A stretch of 64,000 nucleotides of DNA from Chrysemys picta bellii (GCF_011386835.1 NC_088812.1:2108001-2172000), one strand, 5' to 3'. Numbered from the stretch's first letter, positions 933-13,112 are shown. Program-made: numbers and translations. Notes: generated by a model from the letters alone, not told the origin.

Positions 933-3900
933 GGCACGAGTAGCCAGTCGGTTACAGAGTATGTGGTGCGAGTACCCAAGTGAGTCCTTTCTCTCTGATT
1001 TCCCAGCCCTCTCTGCCCACGCGGCGCCTGGCTGAAAGCTCATCTCCCTGGGGAAAACAGACAGCCACAGTTTAAGATGTCAGAGCGGAGGTGGGGGAGT
1101 GTCCCCTGCATTGCTGGGTCAAATCAAGCTCAGGTCACTGTTCTCTGACAACGGATGAACTGAGCTGTAGGCCTCGGCCCCTCTCCCTGGCTATCCAGCC
1201 TCTGGTTTGTTTGATCTAAACACTATGCTTCCTGCTGAGCCCGAGGCCACGTCTCTTTGGAGTATTATGGTGATTCCCCAATTGAGATCAGGGTCCTGCC
1301 CTGAAGAGCTTGCAGTTTAAATAGACAAAGGGTGGGAAGGGAAACTGAGGCACGGCGCGGGACTGTGGTTTGCCCAAGATCACCCAGGTGCGCAGGGCAG
1401 GGAATTGAGCCACGCCGCCTGTTGTATCGGATCGATCCTACTGCACCCTGTGGTGGGTTCAGTACAGAGACGGGGGCCTGACAGGGAGGGGGGTCGGGCA
1501 GGGCTGAGGCCTGCTGGCAGCAGGGATTGGGTAGCCCTGCTGCCCGGGTGCGATTTGCTGTGTGGCTAGCGAGTGCTCGGCATAGTGCCAGGCTTCCAGC
1601 AGGGGGTGTGGGGATGTCACTCACTCCTCGAGCTGGAGCTGCTGGCCGCTCAGGTGTCTGCCCTCCTCTTGCTGCAGAAACACACCCAAGAAGTACAACA
1701 TCATGGCCTTCAACGCCGCCGACAAGGTCAACTTCACCACCTGGCACCAGGTAGGATGCCCCCGAGCCCCACATGGCCAGGGCAGCCTGCCCGCTGCTTG
1801 GAGGCACTGCCAGGTGCCGGAGCTCCCTTAGCGCTGACGGCCTGGCCACTCCAGCGGGGTGGATCGATAGTTGTGACTGCATCTGGGGCCGGGCCTGGCA
1901 GCAAGGCTAGAAATACTGGGCACAGCGCCCCCCCCATAATGCACTGGACCACAGGGCAGCCTCTTGCTTCCCCACCATGCTGGGGAACACATCTGGGCCC
2001 ACCCCCTGCATGGATGGATCCCTGATACTGCAGACAGCGGCGAGCCCTCTCTCAAGTGCCCCGGGTGCAGGGCTCTTCTCAGCCTGGCGAGGGGTCCCAG
2101 GAGGTGGCTCGGTTTCAGCCCCGAAGCCCAGCGTTCGCTCTGGCTCTTGGTGCCCAGCGCTGTGGGCGGCCTGGTCCGGGTCACGGCATGGCCCTCGCTA
2201 GCTCGGCGCCGCAGGGAGCTGAGCGGGCACTGCCGTGCAGCGCTGGGGAACCAGACGCAGTGAGGCGGCCGAGCAGGGGGGATTTTCTTTCCCCAGGGAC
2301 GGGGAGGTGACGTTCTCCTTTGCTCCCTCCCGCAGGCGAAAATGGAGCGAGATCTCAGCAACAAGAAGATCTACCAGGAAGAGGAGATGCCGGAGTCGGG
2401 GGCCGGCAGCGAGTTCAACCGCAAGCTGCGGGAGGAAGCGCGCCGCAAGAAGTACGGCATTGTCCTGCGGGAGTTCAAGCCCGAGGACCAGCCCTGGATC
2501 CTCAAGGTCAACGGCAAAGCTGGGCGCAAGTGAGTGGGGTTCCTGGGGGCCGAAGTGTGAGCGCTGGGTCCAAACGCACAGGCCCCTCCAGCCTGCGCTC
2601 CAAGCCCCAGCTGTGCTGGCCAGAGGCCTCCTTTGGAGAGGGAGGGTTAGAGTGTGGCCCTAACCCCATGCCACGGGGCAGAGGAAGAACCCAGGAATCC
2701 TAGGTCGCTGTGTCCCTGCTCTGACCACTAGACATCACTCCCTCCGAGCCAGGAGTGGAGCCTAAGAGTCCTGCCTCCCCAGCCTCCTTGCTTTAACCAC
2801 TAGTTTCCACTCCCTACCCAGGGTCCTGGCTTCCAGCCCCAACCACTGGGCCATTGGACCAGATCCCAGGTGCCCCCCTGAATCCAGCTCTTCCTTTCCC
2901 TCGTGTCCAGGTTCAAAGGGGTGAAGAAGGGCGGCGTGACCGAGAACGCCTCCTACTACATCTTCACGCAGTGCCCTGATGGCGCCTTCGAGGCCTTCCC
3001 GGTCAGCAACTGGTACAACTTCACCCCCGTGGCCAAGCACCGCACCCTGACGGCCGAGGAGGCGGAGGAGGAGTGGGAGCGGTGAGTGAGGGGCACGGGC
3101 TGCCCCGCCCTGCTGTCGCCAGGAGTCCTGGCGCTCTGTGCTCTAACCCGCGAGACCCCATGCCCCTCCCTACAGGGGGAATAGAACCCAGGAGTTCTGG
3201 CACTCAGCGCTTTAACCCATAGACCCCCTACGCCCCTCCCTACAGGGGGAATAGAACCCAGGAGTCCTGGCTGCCAGGCCCCTGCTCTACGCACTAGACC
3301 CAACCGGGGCTTGTCCCTGGGATTGGCTGACACAGGCAGGTCTGTGCTCCTGGCAGCTCGGAGCTGGAGGACGGGCTGGGGGTGCAGTGTCTGGGTAGGA
3401 CCCGTGCTGCAGCTGGGGCTCCTTGCGGCCTGCACGGCATCGTGGGATGAGGAGTCCCCTCTGTGTCACCAGGCCAACCGACTGGCCCTCTCCCTGGCTG
3501 CTTCCACCAGGGCAGGCGTGGAGCTCGGCACCGGCCTCCCTGGGTCTGGCACCCCCCTTCCAGCCTGGTACCAGGGAGCCCTGCTCCTTTCCCTGTGGAT
3601 CATATGGGTTTGGGGGGGTCCCTTCTCCCCCCCTTGCAATCCCAACAGCAGCCCCATAGGGCTGGGTTTCACCCCGTCACGGCAGAGCCCCTCTCCCCTG
3701 TGGCGGGGTCAGGCAGTGGAGGGGGTCCCACCCCCAGTGTTCTCACCCCCTGCCCTCTCCCTCCCAGGCGGAACAAGGTGCTGAACCACTTCACCATCAT
3801 GCAGCAGCGGCGGCGGAAGGACCAGGACGACGAGGAGGAGGAGAAGGAGAAGAAGACCAAGAAGAAGAGCAGCGAGTTGAAGATCCACGACCTGGAGGAC

Positions 3901-6900
3901 GACCTGGAGATGAGCTCAGACGAGAGCGAGCTGAGTGACGCCGACGGTGAGGGGCCCCCGGGGGCTGAGCCAGCCCTGCTGCCCCGGACCACCAGCACCC
4001 ACAGCCCCTCTTTCTGCTGCCCTGAGGTCACTGAGCCAGCCCTAGCTGGTGCTGCCCCCTGCTGGGGGTCACGGGGGTAGACCAGGGACCCCTTTCTCAC
4101 TCATGGCCTGTGTCCCGGCTAACGGGTGACCTGGCTACTGCCTGGGCCTGTGTGTCTGTAGCTCGGGGCCCAGGCTGACCCCTGTGCCTTCGAAGCATGG
4201 CGCTACCCCTCTGAGAGCCTGCAGCCCGTCAGGAGTCCCCATGTAGAACCCAGGCGTCCTGGTTCTCGGCCCCTCCCTCTAACCCCATTCCCCTCTTGCT
4301 GGGCCTGTGGCTGTCACCTCCCCCCCCCCAGGTCTTGCCACGACCCTGCCACTGAGCCAGCCGTGGGCTGTTTCCCATAATGCTACAGGGGAGAAGGCGG
4401 CCAAGCCCCAGAAGAAAACCCCGCTGACCAAGAAGAAGAAGAAGAAGAAGGGCTCGGACGACGAGGCCTTCGAAGACAGCGACGACGGAGACTTTGAGGG
4501 GCAGGAAGTGGATTACATGTCGGACGGGTCCAGGTAAGGGTGGGGCCTCAGGGGCGAGGTCTGTTCCGCCGGGACAGGGTGCCTGGGTCAGCTCCACTCA
4601 GCTCCTCACCTGGCGCTGCCTGTGCCCATTAAGCAGCATGTTCTGTTCCTCACCTGTCCTGGCTGTACCCTGCACGGTTAGTCTTGGCAGAGGCAGGTTC
4701 CCTCCCCCACCCCCTTTGTGCCAGGCTGTCCCCCATCAGCCCCCTCTCGTGTCTTGCAGCAGTTCGCAGGAGGAGGCAGCAGTGGGGAAGCCCAAGGTGA
4801 CAAAGGAAGAGGATGGTCCCAAAGGTACGTGGCAGATACGGGGCCCCGGTTGGCACCGCTGAGACCTGGTGGTGGCGGCACCCCTCAGACCTCAGCGGGG
4901 CCTTTGGTGCCATCACGCCTGGTTGGAAATTCTCCATCGAGGCTGCTTTCCGGTGGAGAATTGGGTGTTCAACCATGTTCCGCAGAAAGCGTCCGTTCTC
5001 CGTGCAAAAATCCGGTTGCTTAAATAGAAAACCGGCAGGTGAAATAGCTGGCTTGGGTTGTGCTGCCCCAGTGCCTCGTGGGACACGGGGCTTCCGGCCC
5101 CCACTTCCCACCCCCTAACCTCGCCAGCACCTTGCTCCTGAACTGGCTTGGGGGGAGAGGGAGGGTTGTTGGCTGTTCAGCGCTTGCGCCCCTGCGGGAG
5201 GGGCTGCAGGGTAAGAACGGGGCCGCGGGGCCCTGGGTTGGGAACGCCCAGCACGAACGCTCGGGGGAGCTCACTGCTCCGTGGGCGTTGAATCTGGGCT
5301 GCAAACCAGCTCCTTCCTGCCCCCTGAGCCCGCTGTCGGTTGGCTGCCCAGGGATCGACGAGGCTAGCGAGAGCAGCGAGGAGAGCGAGGAGGAGAAGCC
5401 TGCCGAGGAGAAGGAGGAGGAGGAAGAGGAGAAGAAGGCCCCCACCCCTCAGGAGAAGAAGAAGAAAAAGGGTGAGTGTTTCAGGGAGGGAGGGGGCTGT
5501 ACCGCAGGGGGCCAGGGGTGTGGTCTCTGCTGCTGGGTCATCAAATCAGCACTGAGCTACGCAGGGTCTCATTGGGGAGTGAGGTCTAGGGGATAGAGCT
5601 GGGGGGGCGGGACTAGGACTCCTGGGTTCTTTCCCTAACTGCCACTCGCTCATGTCAGCCCCTTGGTCACTTCCCCCCCTCCTCCCCCCCAGGGCTGGTG
5701 CGGAGTCTCCATGGGGGGGTCTGGGGGAGGAGCTATGAAATCACTTTGAGAAACCTCTCCTTGTTAACCCTTAAAGTGCCGGTATCTACCAAGCGGCCTC
5801 CTCCAAAGGGGGACAGGACTCCTCCCTGGGCTGCCCCACATCCCGCCCCCAGTTGATGCTGTGCCAGCTAGCCCAAGTGTGCATGTGGGGGGGGGTTCCC
5901 CTCACTGGGGTGGTGCTGTGACTGGAAGTCCTCCCCCACTTCACAGCCCAAGGCGTCTGGTTCAGGTCTCTGGCTGGACTGAGCGAAGAGCCCCGGGGTG
6001 GCCGGAGCCAGGGGCCATGGGAGGGCATAGAGAGAGAGAGCTCTGACCCCAAGCACTCCAGAGGGGCTGGAGATTGACAGGTGATTCAGAGGGGAGGGAC
6101 TTGCTCTGACCCCGCCCACACCATGTGTTGCAGACAGCAGCGATGAGTCAGAGACGTCCGAGGAGAGCGACATCGACAGCGAAGCGTCCTCAGCGCTCTT
6201 CATGGCGGTAACCCCAACCCGCGTCCTTTGGGAGGGCGGGGGGCTGTCTGGGTTGCCCGCTTGTGGGCTCTGGATGCTCGGGGCCTTGGCTGGATCCCAA
6301 ACCTTTAGCTCGTCTTTGAGCAACGTCCCCACGGGTGCTCCACGTTAGGTGTTTGCGTCCCTGTGCCTAGGATCGCAGGGGTTTGGTAGCAGCGCCTGTT
6401 TGGGCCACACCTGTGCTCCCGTCTTGCGCCCTGTGTGGCAGCTGTGTAGCGCTGGGCGGCCCAACCGCCCTTGGCCTGAGCCTCCTAGTGAGTCTTCAAG
6501 TGCCTCGGTTCTCGTTTCGTAGCGTTGGTTCCCATTTTAGCCAGTTCCCATTTTCCCTCTTTCCTTTCTTTCTTTCTAACAAAACAACCCATTTTTTCCC
6601 CTTTCCTTGTCATTACCCCCCGTAGGTTGATTCCAATCAGGGGGTTGTGCCCGGATTCAAACGGTGCCTCTCCTGCCAGGAAGCCATCCCCGTCAGCGAC
6701 GGGCACCCCCGTTGCCTCCGGTGCATGGGAGAGGCACACGTGCCCCAAAAGTGCACGCACTGCTTTAACCTTAAGGCGCGCAGTCAGAAAGCCTGTGACC
6801 TGAAGCTAAAACCCCAAATGAAGGAGAGCCTGCTGCGGCCAGCCTCAGACCCTGGTCCTGGGACCCCCCCTGGACAACGATCACCATCAGCACCAGCTGC

Positions 6901-9900
6901 TCCACACTCCCTGCAGGCTACGAAGAGGAAATCAACAGATTCCTCACGAAAAGACGCTAAAAAGCGAGCCCCACGTTCGCCCACCCAGGAGCCGAGGAAA
7001 AGAAAGAGGTCCCCAGGGAGATCAGTAGCTTTGGCACCAACAGGTGTAATACTGAGCACCTATGACGCCCCTGGGACCTCCGGTATGGTCGACGCCGGTA
7101 AGTCCAAGGACCCCAAGAGGGCAAGACTGGACAAGACTGCACCGTCCGGCGACAGAGGCCAGGAAAAGCCCAAAGCCTCAAAGACGGAACCGACCAGCCA
7201 CACGGCACCGGGCACTTGGGCGCCGCCTGCTGGGCATTCAGCGGAACGCAGAGCAACCCTGGCGCTGGCCAGACCGTCGGCACCAGCACCGACACAACTA
7301 ACTCCCACGGTACCGAAGACGCCACCGGAGTTTAGATTCCCAAAAGACGGATTTGTCTCTGAGACGCCAGAGTCTCCACCGCTCCGGACCAAGATGGCTG
7401 CGGTACACACCAAACCCACCCGTTCACCGTCACCATCCAGGACTGGCCCCCCCTTCTCCAGTGGAGACGAGGAGGAAAATGATGCTGATTCTGTGCCTTC
7501 ACGCAACTGCCCTTCGCGTCGGGGCACTGCACAACTTGACTCTTCTGCCCGCCGTAGATACCAGGAGCCCAGAGGTGACCCAACACCCTGGTATGGACAC
7601 CCGTGGGTGCCCCCCTTTATGCCTGTGCCCCCACAATGGCCTTGCTGGGATCCATGGGCTGCTTATAGGCAACAGTTTTCCAGGCCACCCGATACCCAGA
7701 GGGAGAAACCGAGGCACTCCCCGTCATCTTCAGTATCCAGACCTCCCGAGCCTGATGGAGAATCTGTCAAGGAGAAGGAGGAAAGGCTGAAGCAGGAAAC
7801 TACACCTGCACCCAATATACCGTCGTCCTCGGCGGCCAAAGCAGTCGTGCCTCCCCCGCCGTTGTCGGCCGATGATGATTTCCGACAGCGTCAGGAGCTG
7901 TTCAGACGGATAGCGGATTCTCTCCACATCCCGTTAGAGGAACCAAGAGAGTCGCAGTGCTTGTTTCTGGATATACTGCCCACGTCCACCAAGATCGGGC
8001 TGCCTATAGTTAAGACCATCTTAGATGCAGCTAAAGCGGTCTGGCAAACTCCAGCCACAATCCCTCCCACCTGTAAGAGGGCTGAGAAGAAGTATTTTGT
8101 CCCCTCAAAGGACATGGAGTTCTTATCTTCGCTGCCCACACCGAATTCAATGGTGGTCTTGGCGGTGAATGAAAGGGAGAGGCTACGTCTGAACAACCCG
8201 TATGACAAAGATTGGAAGAAACTAGATTTGCTAGGCCGTAAAGCACACTCTTCGGCAGCTCTCCAATTCCGAATTGCCAATTACGAGGCGTTCGTGTCAA
8301 GGTATAACCACACAAACTATTCAAAACTGAACGAATTTATTCAATATATCCCAGAGGATAAAAGAAAACAATTCCAGGCAGTCGTGACGGAGGGCCAGCT
8401 GCTGGCCAGGACGGCATTGCAAGCGTCCCTAGATGCGGCAGACGCGGCTGCCCGCTCCATAGCAACAGCGGCGGTTATGAGGCGAGTATCGTGGCTACGT
8501 CTTTCAGGACTCCCGAAGTACATACAAGCTACAGTGGAGGATTTTCCCTTTGAAGGCTCCAACTTATTCGCCAACAAGACTGATGACTATTTCCGCTCCA
8601 TCCGGGATGCAAGAGAGACGCTGAGAGCGTTGCGTGTCTCCACACCAGTACCAAGGAGACAGCAGAATAGATACCATGCTACCTCGAGATCTCGAACCTC
8701 TGCATTTCCCCCACCTCAAAGAGACTACGACCCGGAAATGACTGAGACCTCCCAAATGTAACCGCCCCTAACATAGGCATGTGCATCTCACCAACCCACC
8801 TCACAACAGAAAATTGGGTCGAGGCTCTGAGTTGCCTCACCCGGATCCTTGTGCTGTGACCACCAGAAAACATCCATCCCTTTGGCGACCGCCTGACCCC
8901 ATTCTACCAGTGTCCCCTTGGACAACTGGGTGTTAGAAATGGTCAACAACGGATACTCAATGCAATTTCTTTCCGTCCCTCCAACCCACCCATCTTCCTC
9001 CCCCCGCCCCCCGACACCTTCTGCAGGAAGAAATAATCCACTCGGGGGCTGTAGAACCAGTTCTGCTCCAACACCGCAGGAGAGGCTTTTATTCCAACTG
9101 TTCCCTCATCCCAAAAAAGAGCAGCGGGTGGAGACCCAGTCTAGACTTCAGAACATTCAACAAGTTCGTTCAACAACAACGATTCAGGATGGTCACTTTA
9201 GCAAAAATAATCCCAACACTGGACCGAGGGATTGATCTCGGCCCTCGACCTCCAAGATGCACCTTTGCACGTTACCATACACCGTCTCCCAGAGATTCCT
9301 CAGATTTGTGCTGGGCTTGGATCCCGGCCAGTACAAAGTACTTCCCTTGGGCCTCTGGCACCCTGGGTATTCTCCAAGCTCCTTGCAGTGTGGTGCACCT
9401 CTGCCAACAGGCAATTATGATGTTCCCAATTGCCTTCTCAGAGCCCCCTCTTGAGACAACACAGTCCTGGCTACACACAGAACTAGGGACCTTTCCTCAC
9501 AACTAGGCCTTCAAATCAACACTCAGAAATCAACACTGACACCTGTACTGCATCCAGAGTTCATTGGGCCCTACCCTGCCGCAGTGGAGGCCAGAGCCTT
9601 TTGACCACCACACAGACTTGCTGCCCTAGCCAATTTGATCTCCACGGTACCAAACCAGTCCGCAGGGATCAGCCAGAACATGTAGACGACTACCAGGGCA
9701 TATGGCAGTGCCCACCTGTGTTGTAAAACGTGCGAGGCCGCACAGGTGTGGCTCCGGACAGAATATGTCCCGCACAGACACAACTTAAACAAAAAACAAG
9801 CCAATCTTACCCGCGTGAATGGCACCCGGTCTGGAATCTTGTCGACACCTATAACCTCTCCCTTGTCACTGGTACTGGACTGCATCTGGGATCTAAAAGG

Positions 9901-12900
9901 GCCAGGGCTGTCCTCAAGTTCAATCCGAAAGCATCTTGCACCCATCCCGGCCTTCCACCACAAGGTCGCCGGCCATCAGTGTTCACCCACCCTGGAACAA
10001 GACGGTTTCTCAGAGGAATTTGAAATCTCTACCTTGAAGTATGAGATCCCACTGCACCTTGGGTCCTTAACCTAGTCATGCGATGCCTGACTGCACACTC
10101 CTTGGAGCCCATGATGACCTACCTGCTCGTTCATAGGCTGTCTTCATTGACAGATGTTTCTTGTTACCCCCTCCCAATATAATCTTCTTCAAAGATAGTT
10201 TCGTTCAGACCTTATCCAAAGTTACTTCCTAAAATACCTTCCTCACTGTCCCTGAATCAGCCTGTTTGCCAACCATTGTTGTCCCTGAGCCACATAGAAC
10301 TACCCGTTCCACACGCTAGACGGCCACTTGCCTCTGAAACTCGAAAGGACTAACCCTTTCAGAAAGTCACCACGATTACTCCTTTCTATTGAAAGATCAG
10401 AGCTCAGCCGTATCTAAACAAAGACTTTCAAAGCAGGTTTCCGACTGCATTCACCTTTGCTATCGTCACTGCGGTTTGCCCCCGAAGGCACTCCACACGA
10501 TCTATTTCCACGTCTCTAGCTTTCCCGACCTATGCACCAATCACGGACATTGGTAAAGCAGTGACTTGGGCGTCGGCACAAACGTTCCCAGAGCACGACA
10601 CCATAGTGCAAGTCTCGACAACAGGTGCTCACTAGGACTGTCCGTGTGATCGTCGCTAACAAATCCAACTCCGCAGCCCTAGCCTTCCAGCGGGGGGCAC
10701 CGTTCTCCTGTCACCTAAAGTGGAGCACCCCCAGGGACACCACTCGCCCTGGGCGGTAACTGAGGTTCTTCGAGACGGGGTGTCCCTGTGGGTGCTCCAC
10801 TGCTTGCCCTCCTCCCTCTGCTTCGGAGTTCAGCTCTGGGCTCTGCGGTAGAGAAGGGACCGAGGGCGGTTGAGACGGGGGAGCACGTGCGTGGCCCAAA
10901 CGGGTGCTGCTATGGAAAATCTCCGATCCTAGGCGCAGGGACGCGGCACCTGTAGGGACACGCATCTCGGAGAACCCCGGTTACTGCACAGGGTGAGTAA
11001 CCTTTTCTCCCCAGGCGGCCGGCCAAGAGCTAACTTCCCTTTTGGCTTGTGTGCGCCGAGCCGGGGGTGTTCTCAGCCCGGCTCCTGGGGGGATGGGGCT
11101 CCCCGGCTTGCTGACCACTCCCCAGCAGAGAGCCCACGGCCCCAATTGCCCTCTCGCCCCAGAAGGCTCCTGTGCTTTGCTCCGTGGGGACGCGGAGAGG
11201 CCGTCCGTGTGGCAGCTGGGCTGGTGGTTTGGCTCCGGCAGGGGGTGACGGACGGGGGTTAGCTTCCGGACTGGGTATCTGGGGGTGGGGATCCCTTCCC
11301 AGGATGCGGAGTGGTGCACTGTCCCCTCCAGCACTGCTGGACAGGCTGCCTTTTGGCTAAGACCCACCACTACCGCCTTGATCCCGGCTCTTTCCGGGAT
11401 CAGGGGGCAGTGACCCCACTGCCTTGGCCACACCCCTGTGGAGCCGGTTCCACTCTGACTCCCTAGCCCGCCCCTCGGTTTTCACCCGGAGCTGGGCGTC
11501 CTCTCCCCTTGCCTCTGTGCCGTCACGGAGATGACACGTCAAGTGTGGAGGACGCTGAGGAAGGAGGGGTGCCCGGGTGGGGGGGTGCCCGGTTGTGCCT
11601 CTGCACAGCCCCCATGCCCTGGCTTGGCTCAATGCGGGGTACACTCGGGTGCATCTCAGGACGATGCCCAATGCCGGCTTCTCTTCTCACCCGATACCTA
11701 GAAGAGGAAAACTCCTCCCAAGAAGGAGCGGAAGGGGTCGGCCAGCAGCTCCCGGGGGAACAGCCGCCCAGGGACGCCCACTGTGGACGCAGGCAGCACG
11801 TCCTCCACGCTGCGAGCTGCAGCCAGCAAGTTGGAGCAAGGTAAGGGCTTGGCGGGAGGGTGGGGGTGGCAGCATCGGGCACTGCTAGGGCATCAACTTG
11901 GAACAGTCACAAACACCAGCAGGGGGCAGCGTTCCTCTGCAGGCAGGGAAGGAGGGGTCCCACGTGCAGGGGCCTGGGGAGACCCCCGTGCGGCCTGGTT
12001 CCTGACCTTGCCAGCCGGAGGAGCAGGGCGTCTGTCGGTGGGACTTGGGACTGGGGTCTGGCCGGGGCACTGAGCTGCTCCGTCTTGGCGCAGGGAAGCG
12101 GCAGTCGGGATCTGGTGACCTCCCGGCGGCCAAGAGGCTGAAATTGGACGCGGGACCTCAGACAACCTCGGGCAAGTCCACTCCCCAGCCACAGTCGGGC
12201 AAGTCCACCCCCAGCAGCGGGTGAGTGACCGGGGGCGGGGCTTCTCAGCCTGTGGGATCGTGGCCCATTGGCCAATCCCATGGGCTGGGTGGGGCTTCTT
12301 AGCCTGTGGGATTTAGGGCAATCCATGGAGTGGGTGGGGCTTCTCAGCCTGTGGGATCGTGGCCCATTGGCCAATCCCATGGGCTGGGTGGGGCTTCTCA
12401 GCCTGTGGCATCAGGGCCCATTGCCAATCCCATGGGCTGGGTGGGGCTTTTTAGCCTGTGGGATTGAGGGCAATCCATGGAGTGGGTGGGGCTTCTCAGC
12501 CTGTGGGATTGGGGCCCATTGGCCAATCGCTTGGGGGTGGGTGGGGCTTCTCAACCTGTGGGATCGAGGCCAATCCCATGGGGGTGGGCGGGGCTGCTGC
12601 CAAGTGCTGGGGTAGGCTGGTGCCACCAGCCAGGGGCGGTCCCAGGGGCAGGAGTGGCGGATGGAAGAGCCTTTGGGGCAGGAGGGGAGCCAGCTCCTGG
12701 CCTCTGACTGGTTCGTATGGGGACAGAGCCAGCCCCAGCTCTGCCCGTGGACCTCCCCTTCGGCACCCGTGGACCTCCCCTTCGGCACCCGTGGACCTCC
12801 CCTTCGGCACCCGTGGACCTCCCCTTCGGCACCCGTGAGCCCAGAGCCTCCCGGGCTACGGCCCAGCCCTCGGCACCCCCTGCTCAGGCCCCGTTCTGCC

Positions 12901-13112
12901 CCCACAGTGACGTGCAGCTGACGGAAGAGGCCGTGCGCCGCTACCTGACCCGCAAGCCCATGACCACCAAGGACCTGCTGAAGAAGTTCCAGACCAAGAA
13001 GACAGGACTGAGCAGCGAGCAGACGGTGAACGTGCTAGCCCAGATCCTCAAGCGCCTCAACCCCGAGCGCAAGATGATCAACGACAAGATGCACTTCTTC
13101 CTGAAGGAGTGA
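933..13112 (+). CDS. GTF2F1: General transcription factor IIF subunit 1 (RAP74), coding exons 2-13; exon 1 with the ATG lies upstream of the window
   Basis: Exons with AG/GT boundaries and consistent phases: 933-979, 1678-1750, 2336-2529, 2911-3081, 3768-3946, 4389-4533, 4760-4824, 5352-5471, 6134-6207, 11702-11840, 12094-12220, 12908-13112 (TGA). The translation matches RAP74 (VTEYVVRVPKN..KKYNIMAFNAADKVNF, ERDLSNKKIYQEEEMPESGAGSEFNRKLREEARRKKYG, C-terminal winged helix TEEAVRRYLTRKPMTTKDLLKKFQTKKTGLSSEQTVNVLAQILKRLNPERK). Confidence 0.98.
6626..8761 (+). CDS. DIRS ORF1 (gag-like): N-terminal Cys/His zinc-binding motif, Pro/Arg/Ser-rich middle, LAP2alpha-like C-terminal domain; candidate alternative exon of GTF2F1
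   Basis: Uninterrupted stop-to-stop frame of 711 codons (ORF track 6647-8761, GTG start). Contains CLSC..H..CLRC....H....CTHC and the DIRS gag/LAP2alpha-type segment (WQTPATIPPTCKRAEKKY, LDLLGRK, RIANY, RRVSWLRLSGLP..VEDFPFEGSNLF). Confidence 0.85.
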   Translation, partial: VDSNQGVVPGFKRCLSCQEAIPVSDGHPRCLRCMGEAHVPQKCTHCFNLKARSQKACDLKLKPQMKESLLRPASDPGPGTPPGQRSPSAPAAPHSLQATKRKSTDSSRKDAKKRAPRSPTQEPRKRKRSPGRSVALAPTGVILSTYDAPGTSGMVDAGKSKDPKRARLDKTAPSGDRGQEKPKASKTEPTSHTAPGTWAPPAGHSAERRATLALARPSAPAPTQLTPTVPKTPPEFRFPKDGFVSETPESPPLRTKMAAVHTKPTRSPSPSRTGPPFSSGDEEENDADSVPSRNCPSRRGTAQLDSSARRRYQEPRGDPTPWYGHPWVPPFMPVPPQWPCWDPWAAYRQQFSRPPDTQREKPRHSPSSSVSRPPEPDGESVKEKEERLKQETTPAPNIPSSSAAKAVVPPPPLSADDDFRQRQELFRRIADSLHIPLEEPRESQCLFLDILPTSTKIGLPIVKTILDAAKAVWQTPATIPPTCKRAEKKYFVPSKDMEFLSSLPTPNSMVVLAVNERERLRLNNPYDKDWKKLDLLGRKAHSSAALQFRIANYEAFVSRYNHTNYSKLNEFIQYIPEDKRKQFQAVVTEGQLLARTALQASLDAADAAARSIATAAVMRRVSWLRLSGLPKYIQATVEDFPFEGSNLFANKTDDYFRSIRDARETLRALRVSTPVPRRQQNRYHATSRSRTSAFPPPQRDYDPEMTETSQM
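8870..10050 (+). pseudogene. DIRS reverse transcriptase/RNase H/methyltransferase region, frameshifted
   Basis: RT motifs are scattered over different frames (DNWVLEMVNNGYSMQF; GAVEPV; GFYSN; LDFRTFNKF; LDLQDA). The expected FPYLDDCLLRAP reads FP+NCLLRAP across a frameshift at ~9425-9432, so the YxDD is lost. Confidence 0.8.
10060..10650 (+). pseudogene. DIRS tyrosine recombinase remnant
   Basis: LNLVM..LT...EPM, PK.LPK, HSTRS and TWASAQTFPEHD motifs in broken frames. The expected catalytic H-Y is H-D (GAC at 10597-10599). Confidence 0.75.
12230..12585. repeat. GC-rich minisatellite (~41-54 bp units) in GTF2F1 intron 12
   Basis: Repeated GGGCTGGGTGGGGCTTCTCAGCCTGTGGGATCGTGGCCCATTGGCCAATCCCAT. 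Confidence 0.9.
12745..12836. repeat. 22-bp tandem repeat x4 just upstream of the last GTF2F1 exon
   Basis: CCCGTGGACCTCCCCTTCGGCA repeated four times. Confidence 0.92.

What the first reader, a model, noticed from the sequence alone, without database searches (positions are those of the whole stretch)
6570..8761. Candidate co-option of a DIRS gag (LAP2alpha-like) ORF as an alternative exon of GTF2F1, giving a chimeric RAP74
Seen: GTF2F1 exon 10 ends in phase 0 (..ATG GCG|GTAACC at 6207). 418 nt downstream, inside the sense-oriented DIRS, there is a branch-point match TTCTAAC (6574-6580). An AG-free, largely pyrimidine-rich stretch follows, ending in CCCCGTAG|G at 6625/6626. The TAG of this acceptor is the in-frame stop bounding ORF1, so the 711-codon frame begins exactly at the first exonic base in phase 0: ..SALFMA|VDSNQGVVPGFKRCLSC.. 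Established: the mammalian LAP2alpha domain derives from DIRS1-like ORF1 and was co-opted via alternative splicing in TMPO and ZNF451. Inference: this could be an independent case. The product would be ~1070 aa (356 aa from exons 2-10, a few from exon 1, plus 711). It would keep the RAP30-dimerisation and charged regions of RAP74 but replace the FCP1-binding winged helix with a zinc-binding motif and a LAP2alpha-type domain.
Basis: partly seen in the sequence, partly recalled or inferred. Interest (0 to 1): 0.93.

Follow-up and report, generated by a model that had tools for sequence, protein, structure and literature searches.

The report
Turtle TFIIF isoform carrying retrotransposon domain
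In turtles, the first gene of an ancient DIRS retrotransposon sitting in an intron of GTF2F1 is spliced in frame onto the general transcription factor RAP74, and this chimeric isoform has been kept by selection since before side-necked and hidden-necked turtles split; it parallels the origin of mammalian LAP2alpha.

Summary

- **RNA evidence:** RNA contigs from four separate studies of the window's species join exon 10 (ends 6207) to 6626, GT..AG, alongside the normal 6207->11702 join.
- **Exon form:** the new exon is a 4,367-nt internal cassette (6626-10992) that splices on to exon 11. It is not a terminal exon.
- **Conservation:** the insertion, the acceptor (TAG|GTTGAT), the donor (CAGG|GTGAGT) and the open frame are orthologous in Emys, Emydura (Pleurodira) and Pelodiscus. 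Annotated isoforms in Chrysemys and Gopherus carry the same fusion. Pelodiscus uses a new in-frame acceptor.
- **Outgroup:** alligator has a ~570-bp intron with no trace of the element.
- **Selection:** the C-terminal 291 residues have omega 0.32 (2dlnL 103). All 11 indels against Emydura are multiples of three, versus 15 of 77 in the flanks.
- **Domain:** this region is a LAP2alpha-type domain (2V0X, E 5e-20; top fold match).
- **Not conserved:** the 420-residue linker is nearly neutral in sequence but stays in frame. The Cys/His motif is not conserved.
- **Losses:** sea turtles carry different disabling lesions.

The isoform already appears in automatic annotations (GTF2F1 isoform X1/X2). 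I found no paper describing it. I file it as a new member of a known kind.

The parts
6134..6207 (+).
   Evidence: RNA contigs cover 6133-6207 and join it to both 6626 and 11702.
6208..6625 (+). Alternative 418-nt intron (GT..AG). It contains the left end of the DIRS remnant, the TTCTAAC branch-point match (6574-6580) and the pyrimidine tract
   Evidence: Joint 6207->6626 in X1, X2, X9 and X10. Contig depth here is 3-8, against 9-162 in the exon.
6325..6420 (.). Left inverted terminal repeat of the DIRS remnant (arms 6325-6351 and 6355-6420)
   Evidence: 66 nt, 80% complementary to 10879-10944; 27 nt, 85% complementary to 10712-10738. The same inverted match appears in Emys, Dermochelys and Lepidochelys.
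6626..10992 (+). 4,367-nt cassette exon made of the DIRS body; acceptor yyyTAG|GTTGAT, donor CAGG|GTGAGT
   Evidence: X2 record 19 is one 4,424-nt contig holding 27 nt of exon 10, then 6625-10991, then 30 nt of exon 11. The joint 10992->11702 is seen in X2 and X9. The donor is conserved in all six turtle loci.
6626..8761 (+). DIRS ORF1 reading frame, 711 codons plus TAA, read in frame from exon 10
   Evidence: Intact in Emys (711 codons), Emydura (714) and Pelodiscus. The stop codon is conserved in all six loci.
6647..6649 (+). GTG at the position of the element's original ATG (Met8 of ..VM|PGSPGFKRC..)
   Evidence: ATG in Emys, Emydura and Dermochelys; GTG here, ACG in Lepidochelys, CTG in Pelodiscus. 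Free DIRS ORF1 relatives start MPGSPGFKRC...
6665..6763 (+). Cys/His motif (C14..C46) inherited from DIRS ORF1; complete here but not conserved among turtles
   Evidence: NG86 omega for codons 1-60 is 0.3-1.2.
6806..7885 (+). Pro/Ser-rich linker (codons 61-420), nearly neutral in sequence but kept in frame
   Evidence: Composition P 18%, S 12%. Omega for codons 1-420 is 0.81. All indels in this stretch against Emydura are multiples of three.
7886..8758 (+). LAP2alpha-type helical domain (core about residues 421-670 of ORF1) plus a conserved C-terminal tail
   Evidence: Pfam PF11560, 26.9 bits. 2V0X E 9.5e-6 and 5.3e-20. Model pLDDT 82.6 with 2V0X as top fold match. Omega 0.32, 2dlnL 103.
8762..10992 (+). 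Untranslated remainder of the cassette exon: decayed, frameshifted DIRS pol / tyrosine-recombinase region and the right ITR (10712-10738, 10879-10944)
   Evidence: Many stops in all frames. No Pfam match. Indels mostly not multiples of three. No AATAAA or ATTAAA.
10993..11701 (+). 709-nt intron between the cassette exon and exon 11 (GT..AG)
   Evidence: Joint in X2 and X9.
11702..11845 (+). GTF2F1 exon 11 (KRKTPPKKERKGS..AAASKLEQGK), the normal partner of exon 10
   Evidence: Joint 6207->11702 in all four runs.

Best explanation
A DIRS1-like retrotransposon inserted in sense orientation into the GTF2F1 intron after the exon ending ..SSALFMA. This happened in the turtle stem lineage, after the split from archosaurs. 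Its pol and recombinase genes decayed, but its first ORF was exonised. An acceptor in the element's 5' UTR, whose TAG is the stop that bounds ORF1, and a donor just outside the right terminal repeat define a 4.4-kb cassette exon. Including it fuses the RAP30-binding and charged parts of RAP74 in frame to two added parts: about 420 residues of low-constraint Pro/Ser-rich linker, then a roughly 250-residue LAP2alpha-type helical domain. The stop at 8761 removes the RAP74 C-terminal winged helix. Shown here: the spliced RNA, orthology across turtles, frame conservation, purifying selection on the domain, and homology and fold likeness to LAP2alpha. Inferred: the protein is made, pairs through the LAP2alpha-type domain, and gives turtles a TFIIF large-subunit variant with altered partners, lacking the FCP1-binding winged helix and perhaps gaining lamin or chromatin contacts.
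For: RNA: the joint 6207->6626 (GT..AG) is in contigs of four runs from four studies (contig depths 14, 162, 8.5, 11), next to the canonical joint (98, 390, 92, 112). One contig spans exon 10, the cassette and exon 11.

Conservation: chimeric isoforms are annotated in Emys, Chrysemys, Gopherus, Dermochelys, Emydura and Pelodiscus. The intron aligns collinearly in all six turtle loci. Acceptor and donor are conserved, and Pelodiscus uses a replacement acceptor that is again in frame. Alligator's intron is about 570 bp with no ORF1 similarity.

Selection: NG86 omega is 0.07-0.39 for the C-terminal part. ML omega is 0.32 there (2dlnL 103) and 0.57 overall (2dlnL 69). Indels that are multiples of three: 11 of 11 against Emydura in ORF1 versus 15 of 77 in the flanks (Fisher p 2e-7), and 14 of 15 against Pelodiscus. 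A neutral simulation gives P(no stop) below 0.002 at d=0.1.

The original ATG is lost here, in Lepidochelys and in Pelodiscus, so translation has to enter from GTF2F1.

Domain: 2V0X E 5.3e-20; Foldseek top hits are 2V0X A/B, prob 1.00; the homodimer model scores 0.84 against a best control of 0.00.
Against: No protein-level evidence. The stop lies 2.2 kb upstream of three further exon junctions, the classic layout of a nonsense-mediated-decay target. The linker is close to neutral (omega 0.81). Sea turtles carry disabling lesions: a 13-bp deletion in Lepidochelys, CGA>TGA in Dermochelys, and a Chelonia model that ends after codon 116 of its ORF1 part. So the isoform is dispensable in at least that clade. 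The junction contigs have only 22-29 nt on the exon-10 side, below the tool's 31-nt bridging rule; this is expected where contigs end at a graph branch point. Contig depths are not expression levels. The dimer prediction may reflect memory of the solved LAP2alpha dimer.
Confidence: 0.85

Rival explanations
1. Unproductive 'poison' cassette exon. Inclusion of the DIRS-derived exon introduces a premature stop and mainly lowers output of canonical RAP74 through nonsense-mediated decay. The encoded protein has no role of its own.
For: The stop at 8761 is followed by 2.2 kb of exon and three downstream junctions, and there is no poly(A) signal in the exon. Splice sites are conserved, as they would be for a regulatory exon. 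Sea turtles tolerate broken frames.
Against: A poison exon needs no open frame, yet 711 codons stay open in at least four deep lineages. Indels are in frame, and the last 291 codons have omega 0.32 with 2dlnL 103. When Pelodiscus lost the old acceptor, the replacement restored the same frame. The cassette contig's depth is well above that of the intron contigs in X1, X2 and X10.
Confidence: 0.07
2. ORF1 is a stand-alone domesticated gag-like gene translated from its own start codon. The splice to GTF2F1 only supplies a promoter, and the fusion to RAP74 is incidental.
For: The ancestral Met8 is still ATG in Emys, Emydura, Dermochelys and the Chrysemys reference proteins. Free DIRS ORF1 proteins start at that Met.
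Against: That ATG is GTG here, ACG in Lepidochelys and CTG in Pelodiscus. In the spliced RNA it lies more than 1 kb downstream of the GTF2F1 start, in the same frame. The acceptor keeps phase 0 in every species, and the Pelodiscus replacement acceptor is also in frame.
Confidence: 0.05
3. Splicing noise on a neutrally decaying intronic transposon. The open frame and the automatic gene models are coincidental.
For: Transposons in introns are often picked up at low level. The N-terminal 420 codons have omega 0.81.
Against: The junction is seen in four studies at roughly a tenth to a third of the canonical contig depth. The locus is orthologous across the pleurodire-cryptodire split, with the frame kept while the adjacent pol region is shattered. 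P(open) by simulation is below 0.002 per lineage.
Confidence: 0.02

Closest known systems
TMPO isoform LAP2alpha (mammals), whose C-terminal domain derives from DIRS1-like ORF1 (Abascal et al. 2015, PMC4495291)
   Same: The same transposon gene (DIRS1-like ORF1) was captured as one large alternative exon of a nuclear-protein gene, replacing the host's C-terminal part. The same domain family applies (PF11560; 2V0X is the best sequence and fold match). Selection is purifying: the paper gives dN/dS 0.38 for LAP2alpha, and ML omega is 0.32 here.
   Different: Different host gene (a general transcription factor), different lineage (turtles only), and an independent insertion. Here the exon has no poly(A) signal and splices on to the next exon, whereas the TMPO exon ends the transcript. 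About 20% identity to 2V0X. Lamin and pRb binding are untested.
ZNF451-L2a isoform (placental mammals), the second DIRS1 ORF1 co-option (PMC4495291)
   Same: An alternative large exon encoding a LAP2alpha domain replaces the host's C-terminal domains, and the canonical isoform is retained.
   Different: The ZNF451 exon is a terminal 3' exon with its own poly(A) signal. Host and lineage differ. dN/dS there is 0.16.
Autonomous DIRS1-like retrotransposons of turtles and amphibians
   Same: ORF1 architecture: an N-terminal Cys/His motif starting MPGSPGFKRC.., a long low-complexity middle, and a LAP2alpha-like C-terminal domain. Inverted terminal repeats are present. Relatives have RVT_1 directly after the domain.
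   Different: The pol and recombinase parts are destroyed. This is a single orthologous locus, only 43-46% identical to the nearest free copies. The element's own start codon has been lost in several species.
Canonical RAP74 / TFIIF alpha (PF05793)
   Same: Exons 1-10 are shared, so the N-terminal and charged regions are identical to the canonical protein.
   Different: It lacks the residues encoded by exons 11-13, including the C-terminal winged helix (..RKPMTTKDLLKKFQ..MHFFLKE).

Membership tests
LAP2alpha domain (Pfam PF11560) | Sequence match to the Pfam model above its gathering score | tested here: met
   The domain alone scores 26.9 bits against a cut-off of 25. The whole ORF scores 24.2, just under. 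35 of 52 family members match. The Pelodiscus orthologue carries PF11560 in precomputed hits.
LAP2alpha domain (Pfam PF11560) | Homology to the solved LAP2alpha C-terminal domain over its whole length | tested here: met
   Profile against PDB: 2V0X_A, E 9.5e-6 with six sequences and E 5.3e-20 with 52 sequences, covering residues 10-230 of 235.
LAP2alpha domain (Pfam PF11560) | Same fold (long antiparallel helices) | tested here: met
   AF2 model pLDDT 82.6, pTM 0.73. The only Foldseek hits with E<=0.001 are 2V0X A/B, prob 1.00, TM 0.56-0.59 by target.
LAP2alpha domain (Pfam PF11560) | Homodimerisation through the helical domain | tested here: inconclusive
   Homodimer model score 0.84, best of three controls 0.00. 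The mark was reached by 21 of 30 proteins solved as pairs of one chain and 0 of 23 solved as single chains. Runs agree in at least 95% of contacts; partner pLDDT at least 82. A like dimer is solved, so the pass may come from memory.
LAP2alpha domain (Pfam PF11560) | Binding of A-type lamins and pRb | not testable with these tools
   Needs biochemistry.
DIRS1-like retrotransposon (remnant) | ORF1 of the DIRS type | tested here: met
   1,616 relatives at E<=0.001. Relatives have the N-terminal Cys/His motif and RVT_1 downstream. PMC4495291 ties this domain to DIRS1 ORF1.
DIRS1-like retrotransposon (remnant) | Inverted terminal repeats | tested here: met
   6355-6420 against 10879-10944 (66 nt, 80%) and 6325-6351 against 10712-10738.
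DIRS1-like retrotransposon (remnant) | Reverse transcriptase / RNase H / tyrosine recombinase genes | tested here: inconclusive
   Pieces of 8897-10632 give no Pfam match. Only motif-level resemblance seen by eye. The region is frameshifted and shortened.
TE-ORF co-option by alternative splicing (TMPO / ZNF451 type) | Host gene lacks the exon in outgroups | tested here: met
   Alligator intron is about 570 bp with no ORF1 similarity. No chimeric GTF2F1 outside turtles among 990 RAP74 hits or the ORF1 hits.
TE-ORF co-option by alternative splicing (TMPO / ZNF451 type) | Exon alternatively spliced alongside the canonical isoform | tested here: met
   Both joints are present in all four runs.
TE-ORF co-option by alternative splicing (TMPO / ZNF451 type) | Purifying selection on the captured domain | tested here: met
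TE-ORF co-option by alternative splicing (TMPO / ZNF451 type) | Large exon ends the transcript with its own poly(A) signal | tested here: not met
   No AATAAA or ATTAAA in 8762-11000. The contig continues into exon 11.
TE-ORF co-option by alternative splicing (TMPO / ZNF451 type) | Protein detected | not testable with these tools
   No proteomics tool.

The most novel reading that the evidence does not exclude
This would be a third, independent and first non-mammalian domestication of the DIRS1 ORF1 / LAP2alpha domain. It would give turtles a lineage-specific, dimerising variant of the core general transcription factor TFIIF, kept since before the pleurodire-cryptodire split (over 200 million years by my recollection of published dates, not tested here) and then independently disabled in sea turtles. 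The same transposon protein captured three times by the same route would point to an intrinsic suitability of this domain, and of the element's 5' UTR acceptor, for rewiring nuclear proteins.
Probability: 0.7. Interest if true: 0.78.

Novelty: new member of a known kind. Interest (0 to 1): 0.72.

Why it matters
TFIIF is part of the basal RNA polymerase II machinery and is usually treated as invariant among vertebrates. Here a whole reptile order carries an extra isoform in which the FCP1-binding winged helix is swapped for a transposon-derived LAP2alpha-type domain. This repeats what happened in mammalian TMPO and ZNF451, so it makes the question of why this transposon protein is captured repeatedly open to comparison. 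The separate lesions in sea turtles offer natural loss-of-function contrasts. It is also a clean example of frame conservation across a nearly neutral linker, which shows that translation enters from the host exons.

Tried and rejected
- **Shallow structure model:** with only the six orthologues as alignment, the model was useless (pLDDT 38.6). It was replaced by a 52-sequence alignment.
- **Decayed pol region:** a Pfam scan of the region found nothing.
- **Failed look-ups:** P0003, P0002, P0031 and P0154 were not on record. I therefore could not read the Chelonia locus. I also could not read a free DIRS copy to see whether the acceptor pre-exists in the family.
- **No local comparison:** there is no second ORF1 copy in the window.
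- **Literature:** searches for GTF2F1/TFIIF with DIRS, LAP2alpha or turtle returned nothing relevant.
- **Terminal-exon reading rejected:** there is no poly(A) signal and the exon splices to exon 11.
- **Zinc motif as a conserved part of the product rejected:**
- **Other chimeras checked:** LYRM4 isoform X1 starts at the ORF1's own Met, so it is a different arrangement.


Full report
**The observation**

The window is GC-rich vertebrate DNA carrying GTF2F1 on the + strand. Exons are recognisable at about 933-980, 1676-1765, 2312-2530, 2909-3082, 3766-3951, 4379-4531, 4755-4826, 6134-6207, 11702-11845, about 12081-12227, and a last exon ending at 13112.

- TTCTAAC is at 6574-6580. An AG-free, pyrimidine-rich stretch follows and ends in CCCCGTAG|G at 6625/6626.
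- The TAG is the stop that bounds a 711-codon frame, 6626-8758, with its stop at 8759-8761.

**The element**

- Inverted repeats at 6355-6420 / 10879-10944 (66 nt, 80%) and 6325-6351 / 10712-10738 frame a remnant of about 4.6 kb.
- ORF1 is intact. Everything after it is broken into short frames and gives no Pfam match.
- The C-terminal 291 residues of ORF1 are a LAP2alpha-type domain:
  - Pfam PF11560 scores 26.9 bits against a cut-off of 25 for the domain alone, and 24.2 bits for the whole ORF.
  - A profile of the orthologues hits the solved LAP2alpha domain 2V0X at E 9.5e-6. A 52-sequence family profile hits it at E 5.3e-20 over residues 10-230 of 235.
  - An AlphaFold model built on that alignment (pLDDT 82.6, pTM 0.73) has 2V0X chains A and B as its only significant fold matches (prob 1.00, TM 0.56-0.59 by target).
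- The family is large, with 1,616 representatives at E<=0.001.
  - Its nearest members, 43-46% identical, include uncharacterised proteins of Pelodiscus, Chrysemys and Chelonia.
  - Some relatives carry RVT_1 directly after the domain.
  - Many start with the same Cys/His motif; one begins MPGSPGFKRC...
- Codon 8 of the frame is therefore the element's original start. The seven codons before it come from the element's 5' UTR.

**Is the splice real?**

I laid contigs of four runs from four studies of the window's organism on 5900-11899. The runs behave as RNA: they skip the canonical intron 6208-11701 with GT..AG ends.

| Joint | Runs | Contig depths |
|---|---|---|
| 6207->11702 (canonical) | all four | 98, 390, 92, 112 |
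| 6207->6626 (skips 418, GT..AG) | all four | 14, 162, 8.5, 11 |
| 10992->11702 (skips 709, GT..AG) | X2 and X9 | 162, 14 |

- One 4,424-nt contig of X2 holds 27 nt of exon 10, then 6625-10991, then 30 nt of exon 11.
- Contigs over the retained-intron stretches are shallow: 3-8 at 6300-6499 and 0-2 at 11100-11299.
- Caveat 1: the exon-10 side of the joint is 22-29 nt, under the tool's 31-nt bridging rule. That is expected because k-mer contigs end where the graph branches.
- Caveat 2: contig depth is not an expression measure.
- The same junction (..ALFMA|VDSNQGV..) is in Gnomon and Ensembl isoforms of several turtles.

The predicted junction therefore exists. However, the exon is a 4,367-nt internal cassette (6626-10992), not a terminal exon. 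There is no AATAAA or ATTAAA between the stop and the donor.

**Conservation**

- A search with ORF1 returned only turtle proteins. Four of the five are named 'general transcription factor IIF subunit 1 isoform X..' and come from Emys orbicularis (96% identity), Dermochelys, Emydura macquarii (a pleurodire, 65%) and Chelonia. The fifth is an unnamed Pelodiscus sequence (59%).
- Cluster members add Chrysemys picta, Gopherus agassizii and Pangshura.
- The window's ORF1 differs from a Chrysemys picta bellii entry at one residue of 711.
- I fetched the loci of Emys, Dermochelys, Lepidochelys, Emydura and Pelodiscus. The whole intron aligns collinearly in all of them, so the insertion is orthologous.
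- The acceptor TAG|GTTGAT is kept in five of the six species, the donor CAGG|GTGAGT (GTTAAG in Emydura) in all six, and the TAA stop in all six.
- Pelodiscus has lost the old acceptor. It uses a new one (ttacccttcag|GCC) about 50 codons downstream, again in frame, and so skips the decayed Cys/His region.
- In alligator the same intron is about 570 bp with no similarity to ORF1 or to the element.
- The simplest reading is a single insertion in the turtle stem lineage.

**Selection**

| Region | NG86 dN/dS, pairwise | ML omega, GY+F3X4 on the species tree | 2dlnL vs omega=1 |
|---|---|---|---|
| Whole ORF | 0.28-0.52 | 0.57 | 69 |
| Residues 421-711 | 0.07-0.39 | 0.32 | 103 |
| Pfam-matched core | 0.04-0.26 | not run | not run |
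| Residues 1-420 | 0.37-0.66 (residues 61-420) | 0.81 | 5.5 |

The near-neutral N-terminal part nevertheless stays in frame:

| Comparison with the window | Indels that are multiples of three, in ORF1 | In the flanks | Fisher p |
|---|---|---|---|
| Emydura | 11 of 11 | 15 of 77 | 2e-7 |
| Pelodiscus | 14 of 15 | 22 of 83 | 1e-6 |

- The one exception against Pelodiscus is a 25-nt event within codons 1-420. I did not map its position; I think it lies in the 5' part that Pelodiscus no longer reads.
- Nucleotide distance to Emydura is 0.20-0.24 in ORF1 and 0.29-0.40 in the flanks.
- In simulated neutral substitution, 0.2% of copies stay stop-free at d=0.1, and none of 5,000 do at d=0.2.
- Frame conservation through a linker whose residues hardly matter is what one expects if ribosomes arrive from the host exons and must reach the C-terminal domain.
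- The element's own ATG is GTG here, ACG in Lepidochelys and CTG in Pelodiscus. This argues against stand-alone translation.

**What is not conserved**

- The Cys/His motif is complete here but lacks its last two Cys in Emydura. Pangshura has a deletion in it and Pelodiscus skips it. It is not a selected part of the product.
- Sea turtles carry lesions at different places:
  - a 13-bp deletion in Lepidochelys, with a stop at codon 213;
  - CGA>TGA at codon 558 in Dermochelys;
  - a Chelonia model that ends after codon 116 of its ORF1 part, where the window has CGA. This is inferred from the protein model alone.
- Apart from each single lesion the frames are open, and the Dermochelys-Lepidochelys dN/dS on the domain is still 0.16. 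The losses therefore look recent.

**Mechanism**

Shown: an alternatively spliced, conserved chimeric mRNA whose reading frame encodes three parts.
1. The RAP74 N-terminal and charged regions.
2. A Pro/Ser-rich linker (P 18%, S 12%).
3. A LAP2alpha-type domain, followed by a conserved tail (..QNRYHAT.RSRT.AFPPPQR.YDPEMTETSQM).

The product lacks the C-terminal winged helix encoded by the last exon.

Inferred: the protein is made and self-associates through the two long helices. The homodimer model scores 0.84 against a best control of 0.00. The mark was reached by 21 of 30 proteins solved as pairs of one chain and 0 of 23 solved as single chains. The runs agree in at least 95% of contacts and the partner pLDDT is at least 82. 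Because the LAP2alpha dimer is solved, the pass may come from memory.

From general knowledge of RAP74, the product should still pair with RAP30 but not bind FCP1 through the winged helix. Whether it contacts lamins or pRb as LAP2alpha does is unknown.

The main caution is the layout of the transcript. The stop lies 2.2 kb before three more exon junctions, which normally invites nonsense-mediated decay.

**Comparison and novelty**

- Abascal et al. 2015 (PMC4495291) showed that the LAP2alpha domains of mammalian TMPO and ZNF451 derive from DIRS1-like ORF1 captured as large alternative 3' exons with their own poly(A) signals. They report dN/dS of 0.38 and 0.16. They used turtle genomes only as a source of free DIRS copies.
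- I found no paper linking GTF2F1 or TFIIF to DIRS or LAP2alpha.
- The isoform is, however, already present in automatic annotations.
- I therefore class it as a new member of a known kind. It shares the domain and the route with the mammalian cases. It differs in host gene and lineage, in the exon being a cassette rather than terminal, and in the secondary loss in one clade.

Noticed in passing
window 8633-8758 (ORF1 residues about 670-711): The C-terminal tail after the helical domain is predicted disordered (pLDDT about 50), yet it is almost invariant from emydids to Emydura (..RRQNRYHAT.RSRT.AFPPPQR.YDPEMTETSQM). The free DIRS relatives show no consensus there. It may be a short linear motif acquired after capture.
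   Followed up: partly
L005:7286-9429 (Lepidochelys), L004:8723-10882 (Dermochelys), P0005 (Chelonia): Sea turtles each carry a different single lesion in the ORF: a 13-bp deletion, CGA>TGA, and a protein model that ends where the window has CGA. The Emys, Emydura, Pelodiscus and window loci have intact frames, and the Chrysemys and Gopherus isoforms are full length. This suggests repeated recent loss in Chelonioidea.
   Followed up: partly
P0294, P0150, P0152 (relatives found): Gnomon models in turtles join DIRS ORF1-like domains to other host genes: LYRM4 isoform X1 in Chrysemys, and OTUD6B isoform X1 and a CR1-like protein in Carettochelys. Other representatives combine the domain with C2H2 fingers, EGF or DUF5523. 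These could be further exonisations or prediction artefacts.
   Followed up: partly
window 12268-12900: The intron before the last GTF2F1 exon holds a tandemly repeated unit. It shows up as repeated peptides (..MGWVGLLSLWD..) in several frames on both strands.
   Followed up: no
L006:9173-9213 (Emys) against window 6560-6575: A (TTTC)n-like microsatellite just upstream of the branch-point match is 63 nt longer in Emys than in the window. The intron length between exon 10 and the acceptor varies from 369 to 481 nt among species while the acceptor itself is fixed.
   Followed up: no
L005:9657-10473 (Lepidochelys): About 800 bp of extra sequence (gaps of 296 and 497 nt in the alignment) sits in the untranslated part of the cassette exon in Lepidochelys only.
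   Followed up: no
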